In this document: in pieces, positions 6,369 through 36,268 of the stretch
How positions within the stretch are numbered: the first letter of the stretch is position 1
Layout: every line of letters begins with the position of its first letter
Source of the DNA: Ylistrum balloti
Taxonomy: Eukaryota
Direction of reading: 5' to 3'
Assembly: GCF_031769215.1 (NCBI RefSeq)
Contig: NW_026782274.1
Span: forward strand, 496,001 to 560,000
Length of the DNA: 64,000 nt
The notes under the pieces: generated by a model
The model's database searches: none
What the model was told of the DNA's origin: nothing
What the model saw: the letters and a program-made list of their open reading frames with translations, nothing else
Position numbers and translations under genes: made by a program

Positions 6369-8226
6369 CTACGAGAATTTTACAAGATTAGTGACGTAGC
6401 CATTAGCAATCACGTATCTGAAGACGTAGAAAAGAAGGACTAAGAAACATATTTTCTTGAAGAGAAGAATCCAGCCGTCGTAAAGTCCGTCCCTCTCTCC
6501 TTCCCCTGACTGTCGCGATTTCATAGGCAGATATGTATGTTCCTCCACCCTTTCGATCGCGTTCTTGGCACCTTCCCAAGAGCCGGGACCGTCCAGGCGC
6601 CATTGTACTGGGGTAGCTGGCCCAAAATACAGTTTATACCAAAGTTTCGGATCAGAGAAGAAGTGTTTCCAGAGGTCCGGTTTACATCCGATCATTGCAC
6701 TAAGTCGGTCGAGGTACTGAATGAAGTAAACCTGCAGACTATACCTGGGAGAGTCGACATATTTCGCTTTGATAAAATCTTTGCGTTTTTCTACATGGGC
6801 AAGACGTTTGGATGCGCTAGGTAACTTAGATTTTCCAGCAAACACCCTGGTGATACATCTTGCTTGCATTTCTAAAACTGGCGGAAGCGAGCCAAACGGT
6901 TGGACTAAGCCGACAACACCGAGGGTGCATGGGTTCAAATCAGTTGGAAACATCAGTTCGTACAGATAAGGATAATGTCCTTCAATTTTGATGATTCCAT
7001 CATCAAGAAAAGGAAAATCAAAGTTGAATCCCGTAGCAAGGATGACAACATCGATGTTCTTAAGAACTGAGCCGTCGTCGAATATAGCGCCATCTGTTGT
7101 GAACTCCTTCACATTGCACTTCACATTAATAGTGCCTAGTAGGATTCTGTTCGGAAGGTCGTCGCTAATAGTGACAACACCCGCGTCAAAGCAGTAGTTT
7201 GGCGACAGGCCGTAGTTGGAATGTTTATAGCGACGATTTATACGGTGGAAGAAAACGGGTCGCATGAGACTCCAAGGCAGGCTCTGGGAAAATCTGTTGA
7301 TGGCGAGATGATCAAACGGGACGCCGTACTCTGCAGCTCTCGAGATTACATATGTCCCTCGTCGGCTTGCTACATATACCTGCAAATAGAATTATTGAAA
7401 GAATTTCACTGATTAGACCGGAAAGTTTTCTGACTGGGCGTGAAATGACAGATACAATAGTTTAGCTTAGCCACATGCAGACCAAGTAAATGATTATATT
7501 TTCATCGTGCCCATTTTCAAATTTAAGGACTTCAAAACATATTGTGATAAACTTGTCCCCTTAATGGTCAAAACAAGATCATTGTACTCTTATGCTTACG
7601 TGTTCAGCATGACGACTCAACTCGCAGGCGACATCGGAGCCGGAATTACCAATGCCGATCACCAATATTCTCTTCCCTTCGAACCCATGGAAGTCCTTGT
7701 AATCGTGAGTGTGTATGACCTTGCCTTTGAATTTATCTAGACCAGAGAATGTCGGCACATTCGGAATACTGAGGTGTCCGTTACACACAATAACAAAATC
7801 AGTCTTCACATTCCGTGATTTGCCAGTGCTTAAATTCTTCACTGACGTCACCCAACTTCCGGTGTCGTCGAAATCGTCTGCCTTTTTAACGTCCTCAACA
7901 ATGTGGCTGAAAGTTATGTAGTTCATCAGGCCAAAATTTTCTGCATAGAGTTGGAGGTATTTCTTAAAGTGTTTGTGTCCCATGAAGTTTGGGAACTCTT
8001 TGGGGATCGGAAAGTCACTGTAACAGGTCATTTCTTTACTAGTGTTAATACTACATGAGTTGTAAAGGCTTGGGTCGCCATCTTTAGACCAGTTGTGGTA
8101 ATTCCAGAGTCCCCCAATGTCCGTATCCTTCTCAAAGCATATTGGTTCCATTCCCTCGTCCAGACATTGTTTGACCGCAGCCAGTCCGGCCACACCCGCC
8201 CCTATTACCAGCACTGTTTTTGCCAT
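6369..8226 (-). CDS. Flavin-containing monooxygenase (class B, FMO family), 545 aa. Coding exons 8226-7600 and 7379-6369
   Basis: GAGVAG (FAD site), FKGKVIHTHDYK (FMO fingerprint FxGxxxHxxxY), GIGNSG (NADPH site), LATGF, hydrophobic C-terminal anchor. One phase-0 GT-AG intron (7599-7380). A pyrimidine tract plus AG sits directly before the ATG, implying a 5'UTR intron. AATAAA on the minus strand at 6095-6090. Confidence 0.95.
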
Positions 8227-11569: not shown

Positions 11570-14500
11570 AATACCGCCATTCACGTGACCGTCGACATCT
11601 CTCAGACTTATTTCCAAGTTCAGTTCTGGAATTTTGATTCGGTAACGTATTACATGCTTTTATAAGTTGTTGAAAGCTAGAAATCCTTGTCGGCGATATT
11701 TTTGCAATATTTGGTTTTTTAAAGCTTTTTGACATAAACAGAATACATGTGAATGCCACATACATTAATTCATTCATCCATCCATCCACTCCATCATCAT
11801 CATCATCATCATCAGTTGACTAAATTCTTGACATCTATAAAAAGTGCAAGAATCAAAATCTTTTTGTATGTCTTTTACCATAGTCACCCCTCTATTAAAC
11901 CATGCTTGATTGAATATAACTGTTTTCCTTCCACCAATCCTCATTGAACCATAGAGAGGTTTCCCAAATATTACTTCTTATAATTTCTGTCCTAACCCTG
12001 TCATTTAATCTTATCCAGGCTGCAGAAACATCCTTCCAAAGTTTATTTTTACACAATTATGACATTTTTTAATATACTCCTTCTCCCTGGTAGATAACAA
12101 ATTCAGATCTGTGCAAGATTCAGGAATTACTTGCCATTTAGCTGTTTTCTGAAACAATCTTCTTACCCATCCCAGTTTCAAAGAATCAATAAATGCCCTT
12201 ACTATTTTCAGCCCTCCATCACAATAATTCTGAGTAACAATATCTCTCTTTACTTTATCAGTTTTACCATACCACAGAAAGTGAAAAAGAGTTGAATTCA
12301 GTTTAACAATGAAATTATCATCAGGGTTTGGCAATGCAATAAATAAATGATTAAATTGGGATATCATTAAAGACTTATTGAGATGAATTTTTCCCACAGG
12401 AGTAAGTGACCTCCTTCTCCATATTTTGACATTAGATTTTGATTTAATTAATTTCTTAATATAGTTTAATTTTGGAATTTTAAGTAAATTAACACTAAAT
12501 TGAACTGAAGTGTTAACTTAACTTTTCCCCACTGGAATTTCAACTATGGTAACAAAGTGTCCTCACTTTATTTTTTACTCCGGATCCAAACCACCTGTGT
12601 TTTGTCAATATTCAATTTCACGCCAGAGATTTTTGCGAAAGCATTTAATTCTACAATTGCTTCTCTCAATGACATTTCTGAACAATCTATATAAGGGAGG
12701 TGTCATCAGCATTTTGAAAGATTAGAATTAGAGTGTTACCGATATCTATCCCCATTTATTTCCTTATTATTTTTAAGTCTAATGGCCAAAATTTCTACAA
12801 ATAGAATACAAATATATGGAGCAAATTGATCGCCTTGACAACAGCCTCCTCTAATATTGATGAATGGAGACAAGGTTCCATCTTGATTTACAACTGCACT
12901 AACATTATTATGAAGCATCTTTATCCAATTTCTTCTGTCAGATGCGAAATTGAAATATTTAAAACCTTCATCAATAGATTTCCAAGAAACAGAATCAAAT
13001 GCTTTCTCAAAATCTATCAAAAACATACCCGGAATATTCATATTTTCAACATATAAAATTATATCATACACTAATCTCGTATTCTCACCAATGTAGTGAC
13101 CCGAAATAAAACCTGATTGATCCTCACCAATTAAAACATCTGAAATTTTCCTTATTCTGCTAGCTATTGTTCCTGATGCAATTTTGTATATGATATTCAA
13201 CAATATAATTGGGCGCCAACTTTTTAGGAACTGTCTTGGCTTATCTCCCTCAGAAACACAAATTCTGACCTCTTGTCTGTGTGTTATTGATAACTTGCCT
13301 GTCTCATAACTAAAATTGATTGACCTTATGATGACCCCTCCCCCCCCCCCCACACTTCCTCCCCATTCCACCTAATTGTCTCCAAAAGAATCTAACAGAA
13401 TTCCACACTGAAACTATCTGTACCAGGGCTTTTGTTTATTTTTCATGCTTTTCAATGTATTTGCTTCTTTGTCCATAGTTTTTCCCCGCTAATTTTGCTG
13501 CATCAGTGAGCCCCTATCATCAGTCTAATTTTGGAATAATTTTTGACGTAAAATTTTTACCTTCTAATCTGAGAAAGTATTTTGTAGTCTTTTCTCCTTC
13601 CTCTTGCTATCTTGCCCGAGATCTTACAGAGCTACCTTTAATCTTTTTTAATAACTGTTTCTTTCTGTGTGATGAGTATGCTATGGTTTCCAAAAATAGC
13701 TGATCATCAATGACATTTGCATTTGGAATATAATCTATATCTTGAAGACTATATATTAAAAGACAATATTGTATTTTCATCTCTAAAATGGTGTTACTTG
13801 AAAGCATTCCTCTTCATTCTGCATACAATAAGGATGGTTTGAATTTCCATAGTCCACTCCCCCATTTAAATTCATTAAATTTCAAGTGGAGAGTTGGAAA
13901 TGAGTGATCAGACCTTTGAACTGGCTCAATACTGGAGTTTGATGATAAATTTTGTGAAATAAGACAAAAATCTAATCTTGCTTGCTTTAATGGATTTTTT
14001 TTCTCCAACTATGTCTTCTCCTGTCAGGATGAACTCTCAATAAATATCTACCAATGAAAAACTTTCCATAATTTCTAATATTTTCTCTCTTGCCTTCAGG
14101 TTATTCGCATTTTTGTAGCTTCTGTCATAATCTAAATCTGGATCCAATACTAAGTTAGAATCTGTGATAAGTGTTATATTACATCCTTCCAGTATCTAGA
14201 GCTAAGACATTTCCTGAATTATCCCCTCTTTTCCCTTTTTAATCTTAATTTCGAAATTATCATTTATCAAAATAACTACCTCTCAAGAATTAGATCTAAA
14301 AGAGCTGAAACAACCATCGTAACCCCACTGATTTCTGATATGTTTGGTTTCCTTCCATGGAATGCGTGTCTTGTAAATCATAGCTACAGATTTTTTAAAA
14401 CTTGAAGTAAGAGAAAACATTAACGATACTCCCAAGACCCTGCCGATTGGCGGAGAGAACAGTTATACCTTCAATTACTAGCTACTTAAAATTACGGTGC

Positions 14501-15540: not shown

Positions 15541-16839
15541 CTGATCGAATTCATCAATCTCTCTTTAGATGTAAACGCTATTTTAGCGCAATATCAATTG
15601 TAAACAAATAAGTCTAATGATGAACGAAGGCAGACGCAATAATTGATATAGGGACGGCAGACAAAAGCTATAATTACAACGATCATAATATTAGGCAATG
15701 TATCTAGCTCGAAAGTGATAGAATAATCTTACCACTAAATATGTATATTTAACGTTTATCAAAACATTGAATCTTGCTTTTTTCTCGAATTCCTGGGGTG
15801 ATGAGTTTCTTACGAGACACATATAATGATCTGTGAGGAGCCACTCGATTCATCGAATCATGAAATTGACAAAAGCAAAATTAAATTCTTTTATTTCAGT
15901 TGAACGGTTTGTTTTCAATATTCTGAACAAATCCAAGTCTGAAGTTACTAGAAATTGTGCAAGTTTAACGGATTTTTGAATTAACAAAATTCTCCCGCAA
16001 AGAATAATGTCTATACTGGTTTTATGTTCGTCTTCCGCTTCAAATTGGGAGGCAGCCATTCTTAAATGGTCATGTAGCGTGTTTTGTTAGCTCTGTGGAT
16101 GATCTTGGTCTTGTTGAAGATTTTCATTTGCAGGCTATGGGAGGTTAAAAATTGTAGCAGACGACAGCATTTGCTAGGTCTAAAACAAATATTTTCAAAG
16201 CGTGGAAAACAAATCTTTTCTGATACAATTTACCATAATGTCATATTTAGATTTATTCAATAATTACTTTATATATTATTCATCGTTATCAATTCATATT
16301 CTGCAAATATGAAGCAAATTTGATTACTTTTATTTAAAGTTTAGCATTAAACATTTATAAGGAATCTCTCCCCTTACAAAACATGTAAAGGGTGTTTTAA
16401 TACGCCAAGATCAATGTTAATCCGGTCAAATTCATCGACAAATGAAATGGGATAAATTTGGTTGCTTCATTAAGTCAAACTTGAGTAGAAATTGAATATG
16501 TAAGAAATCATTTTATATCTGTGTTTTTCAAAGGGCACTGATACGCATGCACCAAAAACGGTAACAAACACCCTAAATTAAGTGGAACATCTTCAATTCA
16601 GTTTCCAGATGTGTTTTAATCCTACATGAACCTGTCAAAATGAAAGGAACGATTTCAAGGAATGTGGAATTCATTTCAGGATAAAAACAGTAACGTAAAC
16701 ACTTAAAGCGAGTAAACAAAGCAGTTGTTTACAGATTCATATATAAAAAAACGCAAAAGAAATTTATGAGATTTATTCAATAAAAATCGTCCTGTGGACA
16801 TTTGTTTGAGAGAAACAGTCACCAAGCCAGCGTTACCAA

Positions 16840-18039
16840 TTAAACCTTGCGTTTAATGACGTAATACTGAAATATCCCGGAGTTGTCAGTGGCGACACCT
16901 ACAGATTGCACTAGACTAAACTTCTGCAATCGCCTGAAGTTAGATGATGACAGAAGAACTGGAGTGTGACCAAACGTAACCATGAACCCGTTCTCTCGAA
17001 CAGTTGGTAGTAATGCATCCAAAAGGACTTCAGCCTCGGTGGAAGTGACGACTTCAGAATTCAAGAAACGATTGAAGCACACATCAGCAGTTCCGGTTGG
17101 TATCTTTGGATCCATTGCATTTCCACAGTGCACTTCATCGACTCGTTCTCTAGCAAAATCAGCCATTTGTTGACTAAGATCTTGACCGAAAGTGTAACTT
17201 TCTGGAAATGCTTTCTGTAACGAAGAGAGAAACACCCCGGTAGAACAGGCGGGGTCGTACAACCTTCCCATTGTCATGGCAACACCACCCAAGAACTGAA
17301 CAGTATACTGTCTTATCCGTTCCTCTCCATGGCTGAGCATTGCATCATAGGTATCGTCAACCTTCCATCCCTCCGCTGGGGAACACAGCTCCTTTCTGGA
17401 GGACTCCCTAAGGAGTGGGAAGGGATAGATAATTTCGACTTTGGATGAGTCCCTAGTCATGATATCCTCAAACAGTTTAAGTTTCTCGGAATTACCTAAG
17501 GGATAATAACTGACCTGTACCTCCTTCTCAGTAATGCGCTCATCGTAAAACAAGCCCAGAATCATATCAGCTGTCACCAAGCTGCAGTGGAGTTCCGGTA
17601 TCTTCCCGGCAATCCAATAATCTGACAAAATCTTTCTTCCGACCAATCTCCACGAACCCGGAACACCAGGTTTTCCCACATCAAGGAAAAATACACTTTG
17701 TGGTAGGTGATGAAATGGCTCGTTAATACGCCTCAAGTCTCTTTCCACGATATTTTCCCATGGTATAACTCTCTCTGGAGATGTACCAGGTGGCATTTTC
17801 TTTTCTTCATATCTTCTAACCTCGCTTATGATGAGTGAGAGACATTTGTTGTCGAGGTGACTCTCAGTGGTCTTACTCAAAGCATCACATAGAAGCTTCT
17901 TCCCGGCATCCCAATTTCCTGATGACAGCAGCTTTCTCGCCTTGTGAAAGTCATTCCGGATTTCTGGGTCATGGATACTTTTGAATATACCATCGTAGCT
18001 TGTAATAGCGTCGGTACGGAGATCCAAGTCATCCGCCAT
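16840..18039 (-). CDS. Intronless class I SAM-dependent transferase, 399 aa from the Kozak-context ATG at 18039; likely 3-amino-3-carboxypropyl (ACP) transferase of the Nat/isonocardicin synthase type
   Basis: Single ORF; CAAC-ATG-G context at 18039; SAM motif I YDPACSTG, motif II GQDLS, RFLNSEVV, FGHTP; AATAAA on the minus strand at 16777-16772. The Nat resemblance is from recall of family motifs, not a search. Confidence 0.85.
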   Translation of the reverse strand: MADDLDLRTDAITSYDGIFKSIHDPEIRNDFHKARKLLSSGNWDAGKKLLCDALSKTTESHLDNKCLSLIISEVRRYEEKKMPPGTSPERVIPWENIVERDLRRINEPFHHLPQSVFFLDVGKPGVPGSWRLVGRKILSDYWIAGKIPELHCSLVTADMILGLFYDERITEKEVQVSYYPLGNSEKLKLFEDIMTRDSSKVEIIYPFPLLRESSRKELCSPAEGWKVDDTYDAMLSHGEERIRQYTVQFLGGVAMTMGRLYDPACSTGVFLSSLQKAFPESYTFGQDLSQQMADFARERVDEVHCGNAMDPKIPTGTADVCFNRFLNSEVVTSTEAEVLLDALLPTVRENGFMVTFGHTPVLLSSSNFRRLQKFSLVQSVGVATDNSGIFQYYVIKRKV

Positions 18040-18630
18040 GTTGAATACAGTTTGTAAGAAAGGGGCACATACACGTGTGTGGTACACGGAATAGGTTAAC
18101 GCCAGCTGTTATCGCACATGTAAGATTAGGGAGTCTTTATCTCACTTGTAACTACATAATCCGTCCAGAGTGACCAGTCAGACTGACCTTCGATAAACAT
18201 TTTGTTACAGGTGAGTCCATCAGCATTTGTGATTGTTTTCGAAAACAACTAAATATAGTAATATAGACAGTCATGTTTTAAAAACTAGGTTAAATCTAAA
18301 TTAAATTGAAAAGATTTTAATTAAAAAATACTGTTAATACAATTTCGATCTACTGAGAAAAAATACAGAGAACGTGTGGTATACCAGATAACACTACATG
18401 TATACAAACGTGAACACGTATGCAAAGATATCCATATTATTCAATAGGCGATACTTTGAAATACTTATTTTCAGTATTAACGTTGAGCTGTTTAGTGAGT
18501 GTAACAGCGGCTCGATCTGTCCAGTCCAACACATATCAATCAGAAAATATTCGTTCTAAAGTTGTTCTGTGCCAAGGTAATTAAGACTCTTTCATTTGCT
18601 TGTTTACTTCTGGAGATTCGGACCAACAAG
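18040..18630. promoter_or_regulatory. Putative bidirectional promoter between the SAM transferase and the divergent P450
   Basis: The two start codons (18039 minus, 18631 plus) face away from each other with 591 bp between them. Confidence 0.6.
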
Positions 18631-21600
18631 ATGGCGTCAACTGGTGTCAGTATCATCATCCACGGTGTGTTGTACTTTCTGAAATATGTCAATTATATGG
18701 TGAGTATTACTAACTTTTCGTTTAAGATGTCTAAACATTCTGAAATGATTCAATTAGATATGATTTCTCAGCATCTTATGCTAATTTTTATGTTTAAAAA
18801 AACCTGAGAAATACATGCACACATGCGCAAGTCCCACATTACACTTTTGGGTATCACATGGTAAGAAATTGCTTGAGGGATTTGAAATGACGACTCTAAT
18901 GCTGGGCACAAAAAACAATATTTGTTTGATATTCAAGAGTTTATTTTCTACATCATGACTTTCGTGCATGATATAGACAACTGACAGACAAATGCACAAC
19001 ACAGGGTTTCCAGATTTGCAAATTGATGAAAATGATGGGAAGGTTTAAATGTCTTTATAACGATCTCGTCAGGAAATATTCGGGAAGCTGGACATGTATT
19101 GATGCTTGTTAATCTGCCTCTTGGTTCCGTATTTATTTACATTGTTCTGTTTTTGGGAACGTGACATTTTATATCAGTAAGACATCTAGAAGTAAGACAT
19201 CGAGATAGCAGTACATGGTTACCGCAATGTAAATTTCAATTCAGGTACAGGAAAAATCATTATCTTCTTAAACAAAGGTTATATCAAATTGTAAAATACT
19301 GGAGTGAAACATAAAAACCATAATCACAGAGTGTAATTAACCATACTTTCATTTGTTGCAGTGCTGCAGTACAACAGTACCAGAGACTGGCGCCATTGTC
19401 AATCTGCTTTTAAACCAACTGTTCGGAGACGACAAACTGAAAAAGCTAGAATACCTTTGTCAATTTTATCATAAATTTGGTCTGTTCAAATATGAAAAGA
19501 AAATATATCTGTTTGATGAGAAACTAGCACAAACTGCCATTCATAAACTAGACAAAGGAGCAGACAACTACTTAGAAGATTCTCCACTCAAAGATACGTT
19601 TTTAGGATCTTCTCAAAAAAGTCCAGAAACAAGACGTGCTATAGCTTCTATTTTTCGTAAAACTTCTATAGATGAAAGAGGTCATGTAATGATCCGTGAC
19701 CTTGACCTTTTGTGTCGAAATATGCAAGAGGTCAGTAGCAAGTCAAGACCAGTGAATATTACCCAGTTCAGCTTAAGACTCGCTCTGGACGTAGTCGGTC
19801 ACGTGCTATTGCATCTTGACCTTGGAGGACTAAAAGGTCATCAAGATCGTCTGCTTGATTCAATGATGACCATTCTGCACAGGTAGGTGAACAAGGAGCT
19901 CAAACGTCGACGTTGTTTACTGGAGATATCTAACCGTATATAAGTAGTTTTAAGATACCCTCCTTTCTTAACGGCTAGTTCATTAACTATTTTTAAAGGA
20001 AACAATATCCTACATTTTGGTTTTACTCTTGAAGCAGTGATAAAAGTCTTTTTAAATGTGGTTTTGTTGTAATGTTAATATGATGGAGAAAGGACGGAAA
20101 TTTTATTTTTTGACTTTGTTTATTATGTGACTTATTTTGTATATGTTTTCTGGAGGTGTTACGCTCTAGCCGAAATAACTACTAACAGCAGTGAGTTCAT
20201 ACGGGCAACCGAGAACCTGGACCGTCTGACGTCACAGATCTTAGAGAACGCACTCAACAAGGATGATCAGACGGAGGACAAGAGGCTGGTTTTCCAGCTT
20301 TACGAGGCTTGTGGCTTCGAACAGGTACATATTATATCGAAATATCTATTAACATTGTGCTTATAAAAATACTAGCAGTCTTATCTACAAATTAATGATT
20401 TGAAGTTATTGATTTTAAATATGTATGTAATAACATGAATTCTAAAGAATCATATATTGAATATATTTTTTTATCATTTACGATTCAAATTAATTAAGTT
20501 GTTTTAAAAAAAAGAGTTATAAGGTAAATTGACTTTCTGAGTTTTGATAACTCGCGGTTTTTATAAAAACGTTTAAATTCCCGGTGTTCCGTGTAATGTC
20601 GGGATATACTGTTGTTTCAGGCCAAAGACAACATGAAACTGTTTCTGATGGCTGGCACAGAAACCACAGCATCTACCTTGCCGGTTATATTTTACCTTCT
20701 TACCAAGTATCCTCACATCCAGGTAATCTTTGTCTCTTACCTGTAATGTTTGTTTATCGAGGTATCATCACATCCAGATAGCCATCCTGTCTTACCTGTT
20801 ATATTTGTTTATCAAAGTATCCGCATATCCAGGTAATTTTTGTCTCTTATATTTTACCTGTCTATCGAGGTATCCTCACATCCAGATAACCATCCTCTCT
20901 TAGTTGGTATATCTTACCTGTCTATCGAGGTATCCCCACATCCAGATAGCTACCCTGTCTCACCCGGTATATTTTACCTGTTTATCGAGGTATCCTCACA
21001 TCCAGATAACTATCTTGTCTTACCTGTTATATTTTACCTGTTTATCGAGGTATCCCCACATCCAGATAGCTACCCTGTCTCACCCGGTATATTTTACCTG
21101 TCTATCGAGGTATCCTCACATCCAGATAATCATCCTGTCTTACCTGTTCTATTTTACCTGTCTATCGATATATCCCGTCATTCCATGATTAACGATACAA
21201 AGTGTTCACTTGTCCTTCATTTCATTACTCCGTCATAATTTCGTTTATGTTCATCACTTCGGATACAGATATTGAACTGTAATACGGCAATGTACGAGGA
21301 TGTAACGATTAGTATACACACAACTATTGTTACATAATCATGCAAGTCTGCTTCTGATTTTAAAATGATAATTATTATTTACTAACTTTAATAAGCTTGA
21401 TTTAAACCTGGAGAACCTTGCAATGGGAATTTTTAGTTTACCCAAAGTGTTAACAATGCATTTTTTGCATGAATTATTACTATAACATTAAGAGTTTGAA
21501 TTCGTGGATTTCGACTTGGTTAATCATTTTTTTGGCACTCGAAAACAGCTTTATCTTTTGGAAAAAGACTAATAGGATAAAACTGCAAAATTATAAGGCA

Positions 21601-23234
21601 CAACGACCCACTTTTTAATCATGAAAATGTTCATATGAAAGCATAAAGTCTTTTTAAAAGATTAGTACACGATCAAATAAATCATTTTCAAAATTTTCAC
21701 TTTTTGGTTGCAGTGCAGTTTTAAGATCGTAAAATTAAATGAAAATCTAACATTTCCCCTTAATTTTCTATCATTTAGTTGTCATTCTACTACCTTTTAA
21801 TAAAAGAGGAAAACATATTGCCTCGAAAATAACAAAGAATGCCTATTATGGAGTAAAAAAATAATAATGATTGATGAAGGGTGGATTATCTCCCGTTACA
21901 TATATATATTCTGCATTTTTGCTTTTAAAATTGAATTTGATCAATTTGGCCTCTAGACCTTTATACATCCTTTACAACCTTAACAAAGTCGATAACACTT
22001 ACAAAATATAAACATCTCCTTCGTTCCCTGCAGAAACTTTTGTGTTTTTCCGACACATCTAGTTCTTCATAGTAGGTCACGTGATATACTATATGTCTGT
22101 TTTTATAATATCACACTTCTAGTTTAGAACATTCTTCAGATGATGTAAATGATAATGTTCGCTTTATTTGTTTGTTTGGAACGTTGGAAACAAACTCACA
22201 AAATACGTTTATGTACAATTAGATGGAACTCCAGGCTGAAGCTGATGAAAATATAGACAGTTTACGGAAAGACCCGAACTTCCCTTTGCCGAAGATAGAT
22301 AGCGTTATGAAGGAGGTACTCCGATTGTATCCTATTGCGCCTTTCATCAGTAGACAGAACCACGGCCCCGTGACTATAGGCAAGATTGATCTGCAGGAAC
22401 ATGTAAGTTAAACGTTACAGTCGTGTTATTTGAACACCTAGTTATGTTACCATAGTGAAATACATCTACATGAATTATGGTTACGTTACCATAGTAACTA
22501 CTTATACGATTTTCTTAACAATTAGGTTGTTATGGCAATCACTCAGGTCATATTTAAACATCTTATCATAGTGTTGCATTCATGTTGTCGTTATAGTTTA
22601 GATATAGTCAAGTGACAATAACAATGTATAGTTACCATTACAACTCTACGTTTAATGTCTGTTGTCAATTTTCCCATTCATAACGGTCACAACGTCTTTC
22701 TAAAAAATAATGCATATGTTATTTTGTATGTTTGGATAATTTAGCAAATGTTCGAAGCACGGCTAATTTATCATGGATATCAGGACCTAGGTAATCCTGT
22801 TCAATATTTTATTCAATGCCAAAAATGACTAACATCAGTTCCTTGGAATGTAAACAGTATACTAATATTGGCTTTTTTGTCGATTGCAGAGCGACCTGCT
22901 GGTATTTACCTGGGGGATTCATAGATCACCATACGCGTGGGACCATCCGCATGACTTCGTACCTTTTCGCTTTTACGAAAGCACTTCCAAAAATCATAGT
23001 TCAAATTTATACATTCCATTCGGTGCCGGATCGCGAGTTTGTATTGGTCAGCACCTAGCGTGGCTCGAGATCCGATTGGCTATTGCGATTTTGCTCAATA
23101 AATTTGATTTCAGGCCAACAGAGGAGACTCCTGACCTTCGGTTTGTGGTAGACTGGACACATGCCGTAGTTCATCCGGACAAAGACATGTTGTTCATGGC
23201 TGTTCCACGTACCAAACCATTTAATATCACTTGA
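18631..23234 (+). CDS. Divergent cytochrome P450, 461 aa. Exons 18631-18699, 19362-19882, 20156-20324, 20621-20722, 22223-22402, 22890-23234
   Basis: Exons join in phase (1386 nt). Hydrophobic N-terminus, AGTETT (I-helix), EVLR (ExxR), PFRF, FGAGSRVCIG (heme Cys). AATAAA at 23532 and 23619. The exon-3 acceptor is an uncommon GAG. Family not recognisable by eye. Confidence 0.9.
20675..21180 (+). repeat. 55-60-bp minisatellite derived from the 3' end of P450 exon 4 and its donor
   Basis: TATCCTCACATCCAG-like core at 20708 (real exon end), 20763, 20818, 20871, 20931, 20991, 21051, 21111. ORFs across the array repeat exon-4 peptide pieces (YPHIQ, LPVIFYL). Confidence 0.93.
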
Positions 23235-31258: not shown

Positions 31259-34200
31259 ATGCCTGTGATTGATATCCCTGACATTACGTCATGCACGAGC
31301 TATATCGCCGCGCTAGATTCCGATCGGTCAATTCCTAGCGCTGTCATTGGAGAAGGTAATCTGCTTCTGTCTTGCCTAGAATATTTGACAGATGCCAGCT
31401 TCACTATTTCAGCCGTCTTCACAGATACACCTGTAGTCAAAACCTTCTGCGAAGAGAAGAAAATACTTCAGTGGAAAAGAGGAACAGATATCGAACATGC
31501 CCTGAGAGATATTCCAATTGACTATCTTTTTAGTATATCTAATCCTAGAGTTTTGACAGATTCTGTATTACAAATACCCAGAAAACTGTCAATCAACTAC
31601 CATGATTCACCACTTCCCAGATATGCTGGAATCCACGCAACCAGCTGGGCCATCATCAATGGCGAATCGAACCATGGTATTTCCTGGCACGTAATCGAGA
31701 CGGGTATCGACACTGGAGATATTCTCCAGACAAGAGCAGTTAAAATTGATCCTGACGATTCTGCATTCACATTAAATATGAAATGCCAAGAAGCAGCCAA
31801 ATCAGCATTCCAAATTCTGATCAAGGATGTTAAACAGGACTGCATTAACCGAACGACACAACCGGTTTCTGGAAGGTCGTATTACGGGTTGCATGCCATA
31901 CCGCCAAACATTGGAGTCCTTAATTTCCAGACGTCCTGTACAAATATCTGCAATCTTGGAAGGGGACTGGAGTTCGGAACTCATGACAATGCACTTGGAA
32001 GCCCCAAAGTTATGACATCAACAGGCGATTTTGTGCTCGTCACAAATGTCGAAGAATCTAATTGCAGTTTTGACGAACATGTTAAACATGGAACTATCAC
32101 AGAAATAGTTGACGATACTTTGGTTGTCAAAACGCAGGGAAACTCGGTTTTGCTGTCAATTACAAAATTGGATGGATCCCATCTGTCGCCATCAGAATAC
32201 AGCGATCTTGGGATATCGGTTGGTGAAAAGCTTTCAAGTAATTTTGCGGTAGACACGGAAAATCTGACACAAATAAGAAAGAAGGAGACATTTTGGAGAA
32301 GAAAGTTAAAGATTTATGATCCAACGACATTTTTCCGACAAAGAATGAATGTGGTTGCAGGTATCATAGATGTTTCTACAGCAATCAACGTCAAGTCGAT
32401 CGTTATTCCGCTACCCGTCCCAAACATGAATGGACACAGCTTCCATACACATACTTGTGAACTTCTTATGTCAGCATTTGTTGCATTCATCGGACGAATG
32501 ACTTGTAACTCGAATGTCTCTCTCGGTATCCTGGCAAACAAGTCGACTGTACCCGAAATGGCAAGAGGACTTTACTCTGACATCTGTCCAGGAGTATTCA
32601 CCGTCGATCTACAGCAGAAAACACATGTTGTCTTGCATGACCTTTACGAAATGATAAAAACTTACAGAGAGGCACAATCGTTCTTAGTAGATGCGTTTTA
32701 CAGGTACCCTGAACTCCGTGGACAAAAGAGAACACCTCACCATAACATAGCGATAGGCCAAATTCCTAGTCATGCGTCAGCTACCGGTGTTGCACAGCAC
32801 GTTCTTCATGACTGCAACATATTGCTACTGTTTAATGACGACGGAGATGAGATGCATTTGATGTACAAGGAAAAGATCGGTCAAGATTTCCAATATATCA
32901 GTGATGTTCTTCAGCACTTCCCAACATTTCTCACTACTAGTGACCTGAATCAGCCTTTGCACGAGACTCATCTAGTCTCAGACGAGGAACTTAAACAACT
33001 TTATCTACAGCCTCTTCCTTTCAAGCCGTCAACCAAAAGCGTTTATGACGTTTTCGAAGAACAGTGTAGGTCTAGTCCAAATAACATAGCTCTGCGGTCA
33101 TCAGCTACATCATACACCTACAACCAGTGTAACGAGTTAGCAATGAAGGTTTCATGCCTTCTTGATGCCACATATGAAGATGAAAGAATCATTGGACTTC
33201 ATTTTCCAAATTCAATGGAATATGTAGTCTCCGTCATCGGCGTTTTGAAAACCAATCGTGCATTTCTGCCACTTCCCATAGATTACCCTGAAGAAAGGAT
33301 GACTTTCACTCTGCGAGATGCAAAAGTCCATAGTATGTTGACTACCGCCTCAGTTTATGAAAACCTGAAATCTAAGGGATTTTCATTGACACAGGTAGGA
33401 GCAGATGCTGTGCAGATAGATCGTAATGAAGTAATACTTGTTCGATTTGCGAAAAATGAGAACAAGGTGAAAGGAAATGAAAATGACTTTGTCCATATCA
33501 TTGATGGAAAGGCAAAAAAAGGCGGCGTCCAGACTGGCAGAATTCTGAATGGACATGAGGAATGTGGAAGGACAAAAAATGGAGAATGCGATGCTGATGA
33601 CTTTAAGATTCTCCAGAACAATGGCTTTACTTCAAAAATGACGAGTCAGATATTAGATGAGGAACTTTGTTACGTGATGTATACGTCAGGTTCCACTGGT
33701 AGACCTAAGGGAGTTCAAGTAAGCCACTCCGGTGTCGTCAATCTCGCTAAAGCGCAGATAGAGCTCTGGAGTCTTCACGATGGTGATGTGATTGCCCAAT
33801 TCGCCTCCATTGGATTCGACGCGACGGTATCTGAAATATTCACAGCCCTATTTTCTGGTGCAACTCTCGTTACTCTTTCCGACGAAGAACGTTTAGGCCA
33901 GGAATTCATCCGTACGTTAAACATGCTGGATGTGAATACAATCACACTGCCCCCATCCGCCCTCAACATATACAGTCCAAACGACCTACCCAAACTAGAA
34001 AAGGTTGTTACCGCTGGAGAAGCCTGTTCGCTAGGAACTGCCCTCAAATGGACGGTCGACAACAAGACAATAAGATTCTTCAACGCATACGGCCCGACTG
34101 AAACAACTGTTTGTGCAACATGTTATGAATTCAAATCGTCCGATGTCCACGTCGACAACACTCAAGACTTACCAATTGGCATGGCCATACCTGGCATGAG

Positions 34201-36268
34201 TGTATATCTTTTTGACAACTTCATGAAACCAGTTCCTCCTGATGTTGTTGGCGAGATCTACGTAGGAGGTATTGGTGTATCCAAGGGATACATCGGTCAC
34301 GCAGCGGAGCACAACTTGGAACGATTTGTCCAGAATCCAATGACAGATCAGCTTTGCCTGTTATACAAAACAGGCGATCACGCGTTTCAATCAAATGATG
34401 GCAATATCACTTACATCGGGAGGTTGGATGACATGATAAAGATCAGGGGCCAACGAGTTGACCTTAGTGAAATTGAGCAAGTTCTGATTCAACATACAAA
34501 GGTGGAACTTGCTGTCGTTGTAGCACATAGATGTACAGACTCGAATGAGATTAGTATAGCGGCGTATGTGGCACCTTCTTTCGTGTACTTGTCGGAATTA
34601 CGGGAGTACTTGACGAAAGCTCTTCCAAAATACATGATACCGACGTTCATTAAGAAAATTGAGGTAGCTGACTTCCCAATGACACTGAATGGCAAAATAG
34701 ACAGAAAACGTCTTGAAAAAGACGAATCTGTACATGAACAATCAAGATTTGGTGGAGGCAGTCATCTAAACGAAACGCAACTTGCTATAGCTCAACTTTG
34801 GTGTACAGTTCTCAAACTTAACGAATCGATAATACATGAATTTCACCGCCAGACATCTTTCAGTGAACTCGGCGGCAACTCTTTGCAGTTGGTGCTCCTA
34901 CAGCGTACGTTAGAAGACAAGCTCCATATCCAGTTGTCGTTTACAGACCTAGGTATGGCAGATACGATAGAGGAATTCTGCGACGTCATCAGAAGAAAGA
35001 AAGATATGCTCCGAAGATCTAATCAAAACAATTCAAATGATCTGCGTGATCTTCGTCAGGTAATAGTGCAGGATTCTATTCTAGATCCATCGATCATACC
35101 TCAACATGCTAGGCGTGGCTCTATTAAGTTCAGTCACTTCTCGGCGTTTGTACAGAAATGTTCCATGAAATACCCAAGGAACGCTCTAATGTCAGGCGTG
35201 ACCGGATTCCTGGGGGCGTATCTCCTGTCTGAACTTCTTGAACAAACAAACGCTCATGTGTGTTGTATGGTTCGAGAATCTACAGAGGCAAGGGGATTCG
35301 GTAGAATAGTTGAAAATCTCAGAAAGTACAACTTATGGAAAGTAGAATATGGGAGTAGAATCGCGGTAGTGATATCCGACCTATCACAGGAAAATCTCGG
35401 TATAGCGCCAGACATTTACACGGCACTTTGCAACGTCATCGATGTTGTATTCATGAATGCAGCCAAGATGAATTTCAACACTGATTATGATGACCACAAG
35501 GTTGCAAATGTCGACAGTACCAAGGAATTCATCAAATTCGCTGTAACAGGCACTCAGAAATATATATTTTCAACGTCATCGTTGAGCGTTTTCCTCTTCC
35601 CCAACAGCCCTTCCAGCACACCACCAACCAATCGAATGTGTTATGAGACCGAGTTCTGGGATGACCCTTGCACCTTAGAAGGGGGCTATGGAAAAAGCAA
35701 ATGGGCAAGTGAAAAATTGGTCGTGCAAGCACTCGAGTACCTCCCTGGCGGAGCTATATTCCGACCAGCAAGAATATCTGGATGCTCTTTTGACGGCGCT
35801 GGTCCAAGGAACGACCTTTTCGCGTCTACCTTAATCGGTATGACGCAATTAGGGTCGTTTCCCGACATGGACTTTCCCTACGATCTCACACCAGTGGACT
35901 ATGTAGCCAAGGCAATGGTGGAAATCTCTCTGCAGATTTGCAACGACAGTAACCATCATGAACATGTTTATCATCTGTTCAATTCTCAGACAATTCCTTT
36001 TAAGGACATTTTCAAAGGAATGGGTCTGAAGTCTCTTCCTCTTGAACAATGGCGCCAAGAACTCCGAAATGCATCTGACGACAGCAAGGTCCTTATCCCG
36101 TTTACACCGTTTTTCCATTCCGAGTTTTGGGACAAGGCGCCTCACTGGCCAGTATTTGACACTTCAAACACAGACAGACTTACCAGCGACCGCACAAAGG
36201 AACTATTGAAACCTTCAAAAGACCTCTTGTGCTTGTACAAAACATATTTTGGTCTAAATACCAAATAG
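31259..36268 (+). CDS. Monomodular NRPS, 1669 aa: formyltransferase (N and C subdomains), relic condensation lobe, adenylation (Tyr-type code), PCP, terminal NAD(P)H thioester reductase (FmtATR-like)
   Basis: F domain: NYHDSPLPRYAG and GIDTGD (Asn113, His115, Asp151). A domain: YVMYTSGSTGRPKG, FDAT, NAYGPTE, GEIYVGG..GY, YKTGD, GRLDDMIKIRGQRVDLSEIE, LPKYMIP, NGKID. T domain: LGGNSL (Ser1208). R domain: SGVTGFLG, STSS, YGKSK. Uninterrupted 5010-nt ORF; spliceosomal acceptor TTTATTACAG ends at 31245. Confidence 0.97.
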   Translation: MPVIDIPDITSCTSYIAALDSDRSIPSAVIGEGNLLLSCLEYLTDASFTISAVFTDTPVVKTFCEEKKILQWKRGTDIEHALRDIPIDYLFSISNPRVLTDSVLQIPRKLSINYHDSPLPRYAGIHATSWAIINGESNHGISWHVIETGIDTGDILQTRAVKIDPDDSAFTLNMKCQEAAKSAFQILIKDVKQDCINRTTQPVSGRSYYGLHAIPPNIGVLNFQTSCTNICNLGRGLEFGTHDNALGSPKVMTSTGDFVLVTNVEESNCSFDEHVKHGTITEIVDDTLVVKTQGNSVLLSITKLDGSHLSPSEYSDLGISVGEKLSSNFAVDTENLTQIRKKETFWRRKLKIYDPTTFFRQRMNVVAGIIDVSTAINVKSIVIPLPVPNMNGHSFHTHTCELLMSAFVAFIGRMTCNSNVSLGILANKSTVPEMARGLYSDICPGVFTVDLQQKTHVVLHDLYEMIKTYREAQSFLVDAFYRYPELRGQKRTPHHNIAIGQIPSHASATGVAQHVLHDCNILLLFNDDGDEMHLMYKEKIGQDFQYISDVLQHFPTFLTTSDLNQPLHETHLVSDEELKQLYLQPLPFKPSTKSVYDVFEEQCRSSPNNIALRSSATSYTYNQCNELAMKVSCLLDATYEDERIIGLHFPNSMEYVVSVIGVLKTNRAFLPLPIDYPEERMTFTLRDAKVHSMLTTASVYENLKSKGFSLTQVGADAVQIDRNEVILVRFAKNENKVKGNENDFVHIIDGKAKKGGVQTGRILNGHEECGRTKNGECDADDFKILQNNGFTSKMTSQILDEELCYVMYTSGSTGRPKGVQVSHSGVVNLAKAQIELWSLHDGDVIAQFASIGFDATVSEIFTALFSGATLVTLSDEERLGQEFIRTLNMLDVNTITLPPSALNIYSPNDLPKLEKVVTAGEACSLGTALKWTVDNKTIRFFNAYGPTETTVCATCYEFKSSDVHVDNTQDLPIGMAIPGMSVYLFDNFMKPVPPDVVGEIYVGGIGVSKGYIGHAAEHNLERFVQNPMTDQLCLLYKTGDHAFQSNDGNITYIGRLDDMIKIRGQRVDLSEIEQVLIQHTKVELAVVVAHRCTDSNEISIAAYVAPSFVYLSELREYLTKALPKYMIPTFIKKIEVADFPMTLNGKIDRKRLEKDESVHEQSRFGGGSHLNETQLAIAQLWCTVLKLNESIIHEFHRQTSFSELGGNSLQLVLLQRTLEDKLHIQLSFTDLGMADTIEEFCDVIRRKKDMLRRSNQNNSNDLRDLRQVIVQDSILDPSIIPQHARRGSIKFSHFSAFVQKCSMKYPRNALMSGVTGFLGAYLLSELLEQTNAHVCCMVRESTEARGFGRIVENLRKYNLWKVEYGSRIAVVISDLSQENLGIAPDIYTALCNVIDVVFMNAAKMNFNTDYDDHKVANVDSTKEFIKFAVTGTQKYIFSTSSLSVFLFPNSPSSTPPTNRMCYETEFWDDPCTLEGGYGKSKWASEKLVVQALEYLPGGAIFRPARISGCSFDGAGPRNDLFASTLIGMTQLGSFPDMDFPYDLTPVDYVAKAMVEISLQICNDSNHHEHVYHLFNSQTIPFKDIFKGMGLKSLPLEQWRQELRNASDDSKVLIPFTPFFHSEFWDKAPHWPVFDTSNTDRLTSDRTKELLKPSKDLLCLYKTYFGLNTK

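What the first reader, a model, noticed from the sequence alone, without database searches (positions are those of the whole stretch)
16840..18039. The apparent methyltransferase is probably a 3-amino-3-carboxypropyl transferase
The C-terminal half (YDPACSTG..GQDLSQQM..RFLNSEVV..FGHTP) looks to me like bacterial Nat/isonocardicin synthase rather than any animal methyltransferase. Nat moves the ACP group of SAM onto a phenolic oxygen in nocardicin. A Tyr-loading NRPS nearby supplies such a phenol. Automated annotation would call this a generic methyltransferase and miss the chemistry.
Basis: partly seen in the sequence, partly recalled or inferred. Interest (0 to 1): 0.85.

Follow-up and report, generated by a model that had tools for sequence, protein, structure and literature searches.

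The report
Scallop copy of published ACP transferase

Summary

**Family.** It is a clear homologue of isonocardicin synthase (Nat):
- By sequence, PDB 8zhu scores E 5.6e-45; every other solved structure scores E > 0.5.
- By fold, TM 0.89 to 8zhv/8zhu; ordinary methyltransferases follow more than 20 orders of magnitude behind.
- It keeps all 60 columns that are at least 90% conserved in the family.
- It evolves under purifying selection (dN/dS about 0.1).

**Cluster.** It lies head-to-head with a multi-exon P450. An FMO lies 8.6 kb away and a Tyr-coded Fmt-A-T-R synthetase 13 kb away.

**Prior work.** This is the bur-ox cluster of Venugopalan & Schmidt (JACS 2025). They showed that the Mytilus enzyme adds 101 Da to N-formyl-tyrosinol using SAM, and they list scallops as carriers. 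The scan's follow-up on the neighbouring synthetase in this window had already reached this paper. The reading is supported, but it is already known.

**Seen in passing, not in that paper's main text:**
- A bdelloid rotifer carries an A-T-R, P450 and ACT cluster with the same head-to-head layout.
- 23 of 80 bacterial loci carry a contiguous A-T-R, ACT and CmlA-like beta-hydroxylase triad with Tyr-type codes. Two of them also have a formyltransferase.

The parts
16840..18039 (-). ACT coding sequence, one exon, 399 aa including start and stop codons; the scallop bur-ox aminocarboxypropyl transferase
   Evidence: ORF and translation. It aligns end to end with 399-400 aa single-exon orthologues in Mizuhopecten and Argopecten.
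16849..17706 (-). Nat-homologous catalytic region, residues 112-397
   Evidence: phmmer against PDB 8zhu_A, E 5.6e-45, chain residues 48-325. Foldseek against 8zhv/8zhu, E about 1e-30, TM 0.89 by target length.
17860..18039 (-). N-terminal extension of about 60 residues, predicted as a helical hairpin. Molluscs and the rotifer-like clade have it; the roughly 335-aa bacterial proteins do not.
   Evidence: Alignment A1. The AF2 model has helices at 25-39 and 43-55 with pLDDT above 90 from residue 21.
17236..17259 (-). YDPACSTG, the family's version of SAM-binding motif I. It replaces the usual glycine-rich D/ExGxGxG loop.
   Evidence: D262, A264, C265 and G268 are invariant in A1. Nat reads YDAACSTG in the printed alignment.
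17173..17187 (-). GQDLS motif, the acidic motif II position of class I SAM enzymes
   Evidence: Identical in Nat.
17047..17070 (-). RFLNSEVV motif. R324 and N327 are invariant.
   Evidence: Nat reads RHLNAFVV.
16951..16974 (-). FGHTPVLL motif
   Evidence: GHTPVL is identical in Nat.
16772..16777 (-). AATAAA polyadenylation signal, about 65 nt after the stop codon
   Evidence: Read directly from the sequence.
19353..23234 (+). Multi-exon cytochrome P450, head-to-head with ACT. Exon-like ORFs lie at 19353-19886, 20127-20366, about 20612-20700 (AGTETT I-helix), 22223-22411 (EVLR) and 22884-23234 (PFGAGSRVCIG heme loop).
   Evidence: ORF translations. Mizuhopecten has the same head-to-head P450/ACT layout, and so does Rotaria.
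31259..36268 (+). FmtATR, a single-exon Fmt-A-T-R synthetase with Tyr code DASTVAAVCK. It supplies the N-formyl-tyrosinol acceptor.
   Evidence: Pfam; code read off the sequence; published function in PMC11869996.
6369..8226 (-). Two-exon flavin monooxygenase downstream of ACT on the same strand; the candidate nitrile-forming oxidase of the cluster
   Evidence: Pfam FMO-like, E 1.8e-86 and 3.7e-80. An FMO also follows ACT in Mizuhopecten L002 and Argopecten L003.

Best explanation
The gene encodes the scallop orthologue of ACT, the SAM-dependent 3-amino-3-carboxypropyl transferase of the mollusc bur-ox (bursatellin/oxazinin) cluster. The neighbouring FmtATR activates tyrosine, formylates it and releases it by four-electron reduction as N-formyl-tyrosinol. 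ACT then binds SAM so that the phenolate attacks the gamma-carbon of the methionine moiety rather than the methyl group. The products are the phenolic O-homoserine ether (+101 Da) and 5'-methylthioadenosine. The clustered FMO and P450 are predicted, not shown, to convert the homoserine arm to the 2-cyanoethyl ether and to hydroxylate the benzylic carbon. Shown here: homology, fold, motif retention, orthology, purifying selection and cluster context. Shown by others on the Mytilus orthologue: the chemistry. Inferred: that the scallop enzyme does the same, and the order of steps in vivo.
For: Sequence: the only significant PDB hit is isonocardicin synthase 8zhu (E 5.6e-45, 286 residues); the next hits score E > 0.5. 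Fold: an AF2 model with pLDDT 93 and pTM 0.91 matches 8zhv/8zhu at E about 1e-30 and TM 0.89, while the best ordinary methyltransferases score E about 4e-8 and TM 0.6 or less. Motifs: all 60 family columns that are at least 90% conserved are kept. Orthology: molluscs form one clade (100/98) that includes the Mytilus sequences P0042 and P0043, which are 54% identical to the window protein, and Crassostrea virginica P0022. The window protein sits inside the scallop subclade (100/99). Selection: dN/dS is 0.08-0.13 against three scallop orthologues with dS above 1. Context: a head-to-head P450, an FMO and FmtATR all lie within 30 kb, the gene set published as bur-ox (PMC11869996). Biochemistry of the orthologue: McalACT with SAM and N-formyl-L-tyrosinol gives m/z 297.1445 (+101 Da), the O-homoserine ether is confirmed by NMR, and there is no product without the phenol OH. 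Wider support: in 23 of 80 bacterial loci the homologue lies directly after an A-T-R enzyme carrying the same or a near-identical Tyr-type code.
Against: Nothing was measured on the scallop protein itself. It is only 54% identical to the Mytilus sequences standing in for the assayed enzyme, and I did not have McalACT's own sequence. No RNA run for this organism was found, so expression is unproven. McalACT is slow (kcat about 3 per hour) and accepts several N-acyl tyrosinols, and its authors say the order of steps is ambiguous. The true acceptor in vivo may therefore be a different intermediate. No paper on the Nat crystal structures is in the library, so I could not check named catalytic residues, only conservation.
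Confidence: 0.88

Rival explanations
1. It is an ACP transferase of the same family, but its natural acceptor or timing differs from N-formyl-tyrosinol. The acceptor could be the beta-hydroxylated diol, deformylated tyrosinol, a carrier-bound tyrosine or another phenol. Scallops, which have at least two diverged copies in Mizuhopecten, may have split these roles between copies.
For: McalACT accepts several N-acyl tyrosinols, and its authors call the order of reactions ambiguous. Mizuhopecten has two copies as far apart (dS 1.06) as either is from the window gene, and they sit in different neighbourhoods: L001 next to the P450, L002 next to an FMO. In bacteria the homologue can be fused to the A-T-R enzyme (L032) or to a CmlA-like beta-hydroxylase (L055).
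Against: The window copy has the P450, the FMO and FmtATR all around it. The free alcohol N-formyl-tyrosinol is a good substrate of the orthologue, with Km 0.28 mM.
Confidence: 0.08
2. It is an ordinary SAM-dependent O-methyltransferase, as the Pfam domain name suggests, and methylates the tyrosine-derived phenol.
For: The only Pfam hits are Methyltransf_25, Methyltransf_11 and Methyltransf_12. The fold is the class I Rossmann fold shared with methyltransferases.
Against: Apart from Nat, no solved structure scores better than E 0.5 by sequence. NCBIfam methyltransferase equivalogs score 11-18 bits against cut-offs of 159-400. The glycine-rich motif I is replaced by DPACSTG, as in Nat. The Mytilus orthologue gives +101 Da, not +14. 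The known mollusc products carry a 2-cyanoethyl ether, not a methyl ether.
Confidence: 0.02
3. The ORF is a bacterial contaminant or a silent relic of horizontal transfer with no present function.
For: It has no introns, and its nearest non-animal relatives are bacterial. No RNA run was found for this organism.
Against: The flanks are animal DNA: GC 31-44%, reverse-transcriptase fragments, and a multi-exon P450 and a two-exon FMO beside it. The same layout occurs in chromosome-scale scallop assemblies. dN/dS of about 0.1 over dS above 1 shows long-standing constraint. The start codon has a good context (A at -3, G at +4), and an AATAAA follows the stop codon. Many orthologues come from contigs of 1.3-2.5 kb, a size that would fit transcripts, though I did not check what those runs were. 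The published work found the cluster's synthetase gene in mussel transcriptomes.
Confidence: 0.02

Closest known systems
ACT of the mollusc bur-ox cluster (McalACT, Mytilus californianus; Venugopalan & Schmidt, J Am Chem Soc 2025, PMC11869996)
   Same: Same length class (397-399 aa) and the same N-terminal extension. Mytilus congeners are 54% identical over 98% of the length. Both fall in the same monophyletic mollusc clade and have the same neighbours (FmtATR, P450, FMO). The paper lists scallop genomes among the carriers.
   Different: A different species and a diverged sequence, with no assay on the scallop protein. The window copy branches outside the four other scallop sequences retrieved, so it comes either from a more distant species or from an old paralogue.
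Nat / isonocardicin synthase of Nocardia uniformis (PDB 8zhu, 8zhv, 9upq; Reeve, Breazeale & Townsend 1998, cited in PMC11869996)
   Same: Homologous over the whole catalytic region (35-36% identity, TM 0.89). From the printed alignment it shares 20 of the 22 invariant family columns, including DxACSTG, GQDLS, RxLN, GHTPVL and FQxYV. Both transfer the ACP group of SAM to a phenolic oxygen.
   Different: Nat acts on a tripeptide beta-lactam (nocardicin E or G), not on an amino alcohol. It lacks the animal N-terminal helices and reads RHLNAF where the scallop protein reads RFLNSE. In nocardicin the homoserine arm is kept; in bursatellin it is oxidised to a nitrile.
Bacterial A-T-R / ACT / CmlA-like beta-hydroxylase gene triads
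   Same: The ACT homologue lies directly after a Tyr-coded reductive A-T-R enzyme (DASTVAAVCK or DAATVAAVCK). A beta-hydroxylase is present, and two loci also carry a formyltransferase. These are the same chemical steps as bur-ox.
   Different: The hydroxylase is a diiron CmlA-type enzyme, not a P450. No FMO is present. The genes form operons, sometimes fused (A-T-R-ACT in L032, ACT-CmlA in L055). In the ACT tree these bacteria are not the resolved sister of the animals.
Ordinary class I SAM O-methyltransferases (Pfam Methyltransf_25 / Methyltransf_11)
   Same: Rossmann-type SAM-binding core; the Pfam domain models match weakly (32 and 25 bits).
   Different: The motif I glycines are replaced. 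An extra N-terminal beta-rich subdomain is shared only with Nat. Sequence similarity to every solved methyltransferase is insignificant. The orthologue transfers ACP, not methyl.
Other ACP transferases (TYW2, Tsr3, TapT/DTWD, nicotianamine synthase/CntL, BtaA, MccD)
   Same: The same formal reaction: nucleophilic attack on the gamma-carbon of SAM with release of methylthioadenosine.
   Different: No detectable sequence relationship: none of those with solved structures appears in the PDB search even at E up to 10. By established knowledge they have different folds or subfamilies and different acceptors (RNA bases, amines, lipids).

Membership tests
Nat-type SAM:phenol 3-amino-3-carboxypropyl transferases (isonocardicin synthase family) | Significant sequence homology to Nat across the catalytic region | tested here: met
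   8zhu_A scores E 5.6e-45 and 157 bits, query 112-397 against chain 48-325.
Nat-type SAM:phenol 3-amino-3-carboxypropyl transferases (isonocardicin synthase family) | Same three-dimensional fold as the solved Nat structures, set apart from generic methyltransferases | tested here: met
   The AF2 model has pLDDT 93. Foldseek places 8zhv/8zhu at ranks 1-4 (E about 1e-30, TM 0.89). Rank 5 onward scores E 4e-8 or worse, with TM up to 0.63.
Nat-type SAM:phenol 3-amino-3-carboxypropyl transferases (isonocardicin synthase family) | Family signature columns: DxACSTG in place of GxGxG, GQDLS, RxLN, GHTPVL, FQxYV, and conserved C152, W225 and E239 | tested here: met
   60 of 60 columns that are at least 90% conserved are kept. 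Nat shares 20 of the 22 invariant columns, read by eye from the alignment printed.
Nat-type SAM:phenol 3-amino-3-carboxypropyl transferases (isonocardicin synthase family) | Catalysis: an ACP (+101 Da) product with 5'-methylthioadenosine as co-product | not testable with these tools
   Shown for Nat and for McalACT in the literature, not for this protein.
Mollusc bur-ox ACT (orthologue of McalACT) | Falls inside the mollusc ACT clade together with Mytilus sequences | tested here: met
   In the careful IQ-TREE run molluscs form one clade at 100/98, including Mytilus P0042 and P0043 and Crassostrea virginica P0022; the scallop subclade has 100/99. McalACT's own sequence was not on hand, so congeners stood in for it.
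Mollusc bur-ox ACT (orthologue of McalACT) | Genomic clustering with FmtATR, a bacteria-like P450 and an FMO | tested here: met
   The P450 lies at 19353-23234, head-to-head with ACT. The FMO lies at 6369-8226 and FmtATR at 31259-36268. Other scallops show the same neighbours.
Mollusc bur-ox ACT (orthologue of McalACT) | Expressed in the animal | tested here: inconclusive
   The one run found holds the stretch as contigs of unrecorded kind, and no RNA run was found. Indirect support: dN/dS of about 0.1, a good start-codon context and an AATAAA signal.
Ordinary class I SAM methyltransferases | Glycine-rich motif I (D/ExGxGxG) and similarity to characterised methyltransferases | tested here: not met
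   Motif I reads DPACSTG. PDB methyltransferases score E 0.5 or worse. NCBIfam equivalogs fall far below their cut-offs. Only the generic Pfam domain models match.
Other ACP transferase families (TYW2, Tsr3, CntL/nicotianamine synthase and others) | Sequence homology to a solved member | tested here: not met
   None appears among the PDB sequence hits up to E 10.

The most novel reading that the evidence does not exclude
The bur-ox core may be much older and wider than a mollusc speciality. It consists of a Tyr-specific A-T-R reductive synthetase, a Nat-like ACP transferase and a beta-hydroxylase. Under this reading it is a bacterial gene cluster found in more than 20 species across Actinomycetota, Pseudomonadota and Bdellovibrionota. 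In places the genes are fused: A-T-R-ACT in one polypeptide, or ACT-CmlA. The cluster would have entered animals as a linked unit, and bdelloid rotifers as well as molluscs now carry it with the same P450/ACT head-to-head arrangement. Bacteria and rotifers would then make still-undescribed O-homoserine-ether (or nitrile) tyrosinol compounds related to bursatellin and, in scaffold logic, to chloramphenicol.
Probability: 0.45. Interest if true: 0.6.

Novelty: already known. Interest (0 to 1): 0.28.

Why it matters
For the finding as stated, little is new. The enzyme class, its reaction, its cluster and its presence in scallops were published in February 2025. What this window adds is one more intact, constrained copy.

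The family does matter more broadly:
- It is one of very few animal-encoded nonribosomal pathways.
- It shows a rare use of SAM as an alkyl donor other than methyl.
- Its products occur in shellfish that people eat.

The side observations would turn the paper's open remark about 'possible ancient HGT' into a testable statement. They name candidate donor-type clusters that can be expressed in the laboratory, and a second animal phylum in which to look for the metabolites.

Tried and rejected
- **Nat structure paper.** I looked for a paper on the Nat crystal structures (8zhu, 8zhv) to check named catalytic and acceptor-pocket residues. None is in the library, so only conservation could be used.
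- **Supplementary tables.** The bur-ox paper's supplementary tables, which would list scallop species and accessions, are not held.
- **P0093.** I suspected that P0093 (326 aa, the length of the 8zhu chain) was Nat itself. It is not: it scores E 3e-35 to 8zhu and sits in a different bacterial cluster.
- **Nocardia in the genome scan.** The genome-contig scan returned no Nocardia uniformis locus among the 80 it kept. Nat's YDAACSTG and LGHTPVL, as printed, do not fit the two search patterns.
- **Expression.** No RNA run holds the stretch. The one run laid down is contigs only, so it says nothing about transcription.
- **Donor lineage.** The quick tree left the animal clade in a polytomy. The careful tree puts molluscs and the rotifer-like clade together only at 86/71. 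It separates them from the A-T-R-linked bacterial clade by a 96/90 branch, with an unresolved position (56/5) relative to the host-associated 'upper' clade. No donor can be named.
- **P0088.** This long-branch protein also has an N-terminal extension, but its neighbourhood is an ordinary bacterial one without an NRPS.
- **Specificity codes.** A regular-expression read of the codes failed on the bacterial proteins and mis-anchored on the rotifer protein. The alignment-based read worked for 15 loci. In 7 loci it picked the wrong ORF and one locus gave no candidate ORF; these 8 are left uncounted.
- **Species.** The organism was not identified. The window's own protein is not in the protein collection, and its best hits are Pectinidae at 72-76%.

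Full report
**The observation**

The window looks like animal DNA. GC is 30-44%, there are no tRNA or Rfam hits, and reverse-transcriptase fragments and genes split by introns are present. On the minus strand an ORF runs from the ATG at 18039 to the TAA at 16842-16840 and encodes 399 aa. A longer in-frame reading from a GTG at 18087 is not needed, because every orthologue begins at the same MADD start and aligns end to end.

A contig from a public run spans 15800-19400 with 0.55% differences. Three fall in the CDS and none is an indel there.

**What the protein is**

- Pfam sees only generic Methyltransf_25/11/12 domains.
- NCBIfam methyltransferase equivalogs score far below their cut-offs.
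- Against all PDB sequences the single significant hit is isonocardicin synthase 8zhu, at E 5.6e-45 over residues 112-397. Everything else scores E > 0.5.
- An AlphaFold2 model built on a 49-sequence alignment has pLDDT 93 and pTM 0.91.
- Foldseek puts the four Nat chains first (E about 1e-30, TM 0.89 by target length, 35-36% identity). A gap of more than 20 orders of magnitude follows before ordinary class I methyltransferases appear.
- The window protein keeps all 60 family columns that are at least 90% conserved. Read from the printed alignment, Nat shares 20 of the 22 invariant ones. These include DxACSTG where methyltransferases have their glycine-rich loop, plus GQDLS, RxLN, GHTPVL and FQxYV.

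**Relatives**

- The best hits are scallops: Mizuhopecten (two copies, 76% and 73%), Ylistrum (74%) and Argopecten (73%).
- Other bivalves score 52-63%, gastropods 38-51%, a bdelloid rotifer 38% and bacteria 34-42%.
- Cluster look-ups identify P0022 as Crassostrea virginica, and P0042 and P0043 as Mytilus edulis, M. galloprovincialis and M. coruscus. The Mytilus sequences are 54% identical to the window protein.
- In a careful IQ-TREE analysis of 68 rows the molluscs form one clade (100/98) and the window protein sits in the scallop subclade (100/99).
- Against three scallop orthologues dN/dS is 0.08-0.13 with dS above 1.

**Context**

- ACT lies head-to-head with a P450 of at least five exons at 19353-23234.
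- A two-exon FMO lies 8.6 kb downstream on the same strand at 6369-8226.
- A single-exon Fmt-A-T-R synthetase lies at 31259-36268. Its specificity code reads DASTVAAVCK.
- Mizuhopecten has ACT head-to-head with a P450 in one locus and followed by an FMO in another. Argopecten has ACT followed by an FMO.
- An AATAAA lies about 65 nt after the stop codon, and the start codon has A at -3 and G at +4.

**What is already known**

The scan's earlier follow-up on the neighbouring synthetase pointed to a 2025 paper, which I read. Venugopalan & Schmidt (PMC11869996) describe exactly this gene set as the bur-ox cluster of molluscs.

- They note that the 'methyltransferase' is an isonocardicin synthase homologue.
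- They show that recombinant McalACT with SAM converts N-formyl-L-tyrosinol to a +101 Da product, identified by MS/MS and NMR as the phenolic O-homoserine ether.
- A substrate lacking the phenol OH gives no product.
- They list scallop genomes among the carriers.
- They propose that the P450 and the FMOs install the hydroxyl and the nitrile.

The claim that automated annotation would miss the chemistry is only partly true, since NCBI already names the orthologues 'isonocardicin synthase-like'.

**Mechanism, and what is inferred**

I take the scallop enzyme to do what McalACT does. It binds SAM so that the acceptor phenolate attacks C-gamma of the methionine arm, releasing methylthioadenosine. 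The acceptor is N-formyl-tyrosinol released by FmtATR.

Homology, fold, motifs, orthology, constraint and neighbourhood were shown here. The chemistry was shown by others on an enzyme whose Mytilus congeners are 54% identical to this one. The in-vivo acceptor and the order of steps are open even for Mytilus. Expression in this scallop is unproven, because no RNA run was available.

**Seen in passing: a rotifer cluster**

A Rotaria socialis contig (L084) carries three linked genes:
- An A-T-R protein with a canonical 67-nt GT-AG intron. It is 33% identical to scallop FmtATR over residues 805-1646, has the same code DASTVAAVCK, and has no Fmt domain.
- An intronless P450.
- The ACT homologue, head-to-head with that P450.

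The main text of the paper does not mention rotifer homologues. The rotifer-like clade and the molluscs share the N-terminal extension of about 60 residues that the roughly 335-aa bacterial proteins lack. The two groups are sisters at moderate support, 86/71.

**Seen in passing: bacterial triads**

A scan of one genome per bacterial species returned 80 loci. In 23 of them the ACT homologue lies beside both an NRPS-like enzyme and a CmlA-type diiron beta-hydroxylase; in most, the NRPS-like gene sits immediately upstream and the hydroxylase immediately downstream on the same strand. In 19 of the 23 the upstream match reaches into the reductase domain.

- The genera include Streptomyces, Kitasatospora, Lentzea, Actinokineospora, Kineosporia, Burkholderia, Xenorhabdus and Rickettsiella, plus a Silvanigrellales bacterium.
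- Pfam scans confirm the domains in the three loci checked. L032 encodes A-T-R-ACT as one 1204-aa protein and also has an MFS transporter, a CmlA-like enzyme and a formyltransferase. L070 has the same set as separate genes. Xenorhabdus L055 fuses ACT to the CmlA-like enzyme.
- Where the upstream ORF was picked correctly, the A-domain codes are DASTVAAVCK (L045, L070), DAATVAAVCK (actinomycetes) or close variants.

These clusters encode the steps needed for a beta-hydroxy-tyrosinol O-homoserine ether, N-formylated in the two loci that carry a formyltransferase. I found nothing on them in the library.

The ACT tree does not nest the animals inside this bacterial clade. Transfer as a unit is therefore an inference from linkage and shared codes, not from phylogeny.

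**Verdict**

The finding itself is already known, so interest is low. The side observations are the only part that may be new.

Noticed in passing
L084:1239-9251 (Rotaria socialis contig CAJNYU010001116.1): A bdelloid rotifer carries a bur-ox-like cluster. It has an A-T-R synthetase with a 67-nt GT-AG intron, code DASTVAAVCK and no Fmt domain. Next to it an intronless P450 lies head-to-head with an ACT homologue (P0074). The P450/ACT layout is the same as in the window. The main text of the 2025 bur-ox paper does not mention rotifer homologues.
   Followed up: partly
L032:5352-12569; L070:4068-11487; L055:2032-7389; also L034-L036, L038-L042, L044-L048, L056, L058, L063, L064, L067, L068, L072: 23 of 80 bacterial loci have the ACT homologue beside both an NRPS-like A-T(-R) enzyme (Tyr-type codes where readable) and a CmlA-like diiron beta-hydroxylase, mostly as a contiguous same-strand triad. 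L032 fuses A-T-R and ACT into one 1204-aa protein, and Xenorhabdus L055 fuses ACT to the hydroxylase. L032 and L070 also carry a formyltransferase and an MFS transporter. This gene set could make a bursatellin-like core in bacteria.
   Followed up: partly
L004-L031 (for example Cardinium L010 and L016, Amoebophilaceae L007, gut Bacilli and Mycoplasmatota, Absconditicoccaceae L005, Peregrinibacteria L006): A second large clade of ACT homologues occurs in endosymbionts, candidate-phyla-radiation bacteria and gut Bacillota. Nearly all of these have no NRPS next door (two of the loci placed in that clade, L018 and L029, do), so their acceptor is unknown.
   Followed up: no
L001:10001-11200 and L002:10001-11200 (Mizuhopecten yessoensis): Mizuhopecten has two intact ACT copies as diverged from each other (dS 1.06) as from the window gene. 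One lies next to the P450 and the other next to an FMO. Mytilus also has two copies on one contig (VDI72202 and VDI72207). Duplication of this gene seems to recur in bivalves.
   Followed up: partly
window 20730-21238 (+), inside an intron of the P450: Overlapping ORFs in three frames all read as repeated peptide units (YLSIEVSSHPDN-like). This points to a tandem DNA repeat of a few tens of bases within the intron.
   Followed up: no
window 12736-13371 (-) and 45984-47494 (-): Reverse-transcriptase (RVT_1) ORF fragments from retroelements lie between the cluster genes and beyond FmtATR.
   Followed up: no
L086:563-11543 (metagenome-assembled contig JAANTA011543758.1): The bacterial homologue P0093 (42% identical to the window protein) sits in a different operon. 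Its neighbours are an aromatic amino-acid lyase or aminomutase, an asparagine synthase-like enzyme, a methyltransferase, a carbamoyltransferase and an ATP-grasp enzyme. This looks like another uncharacterised aromatic amino-acid pathway that uses this transferase family.
   Followed up: no
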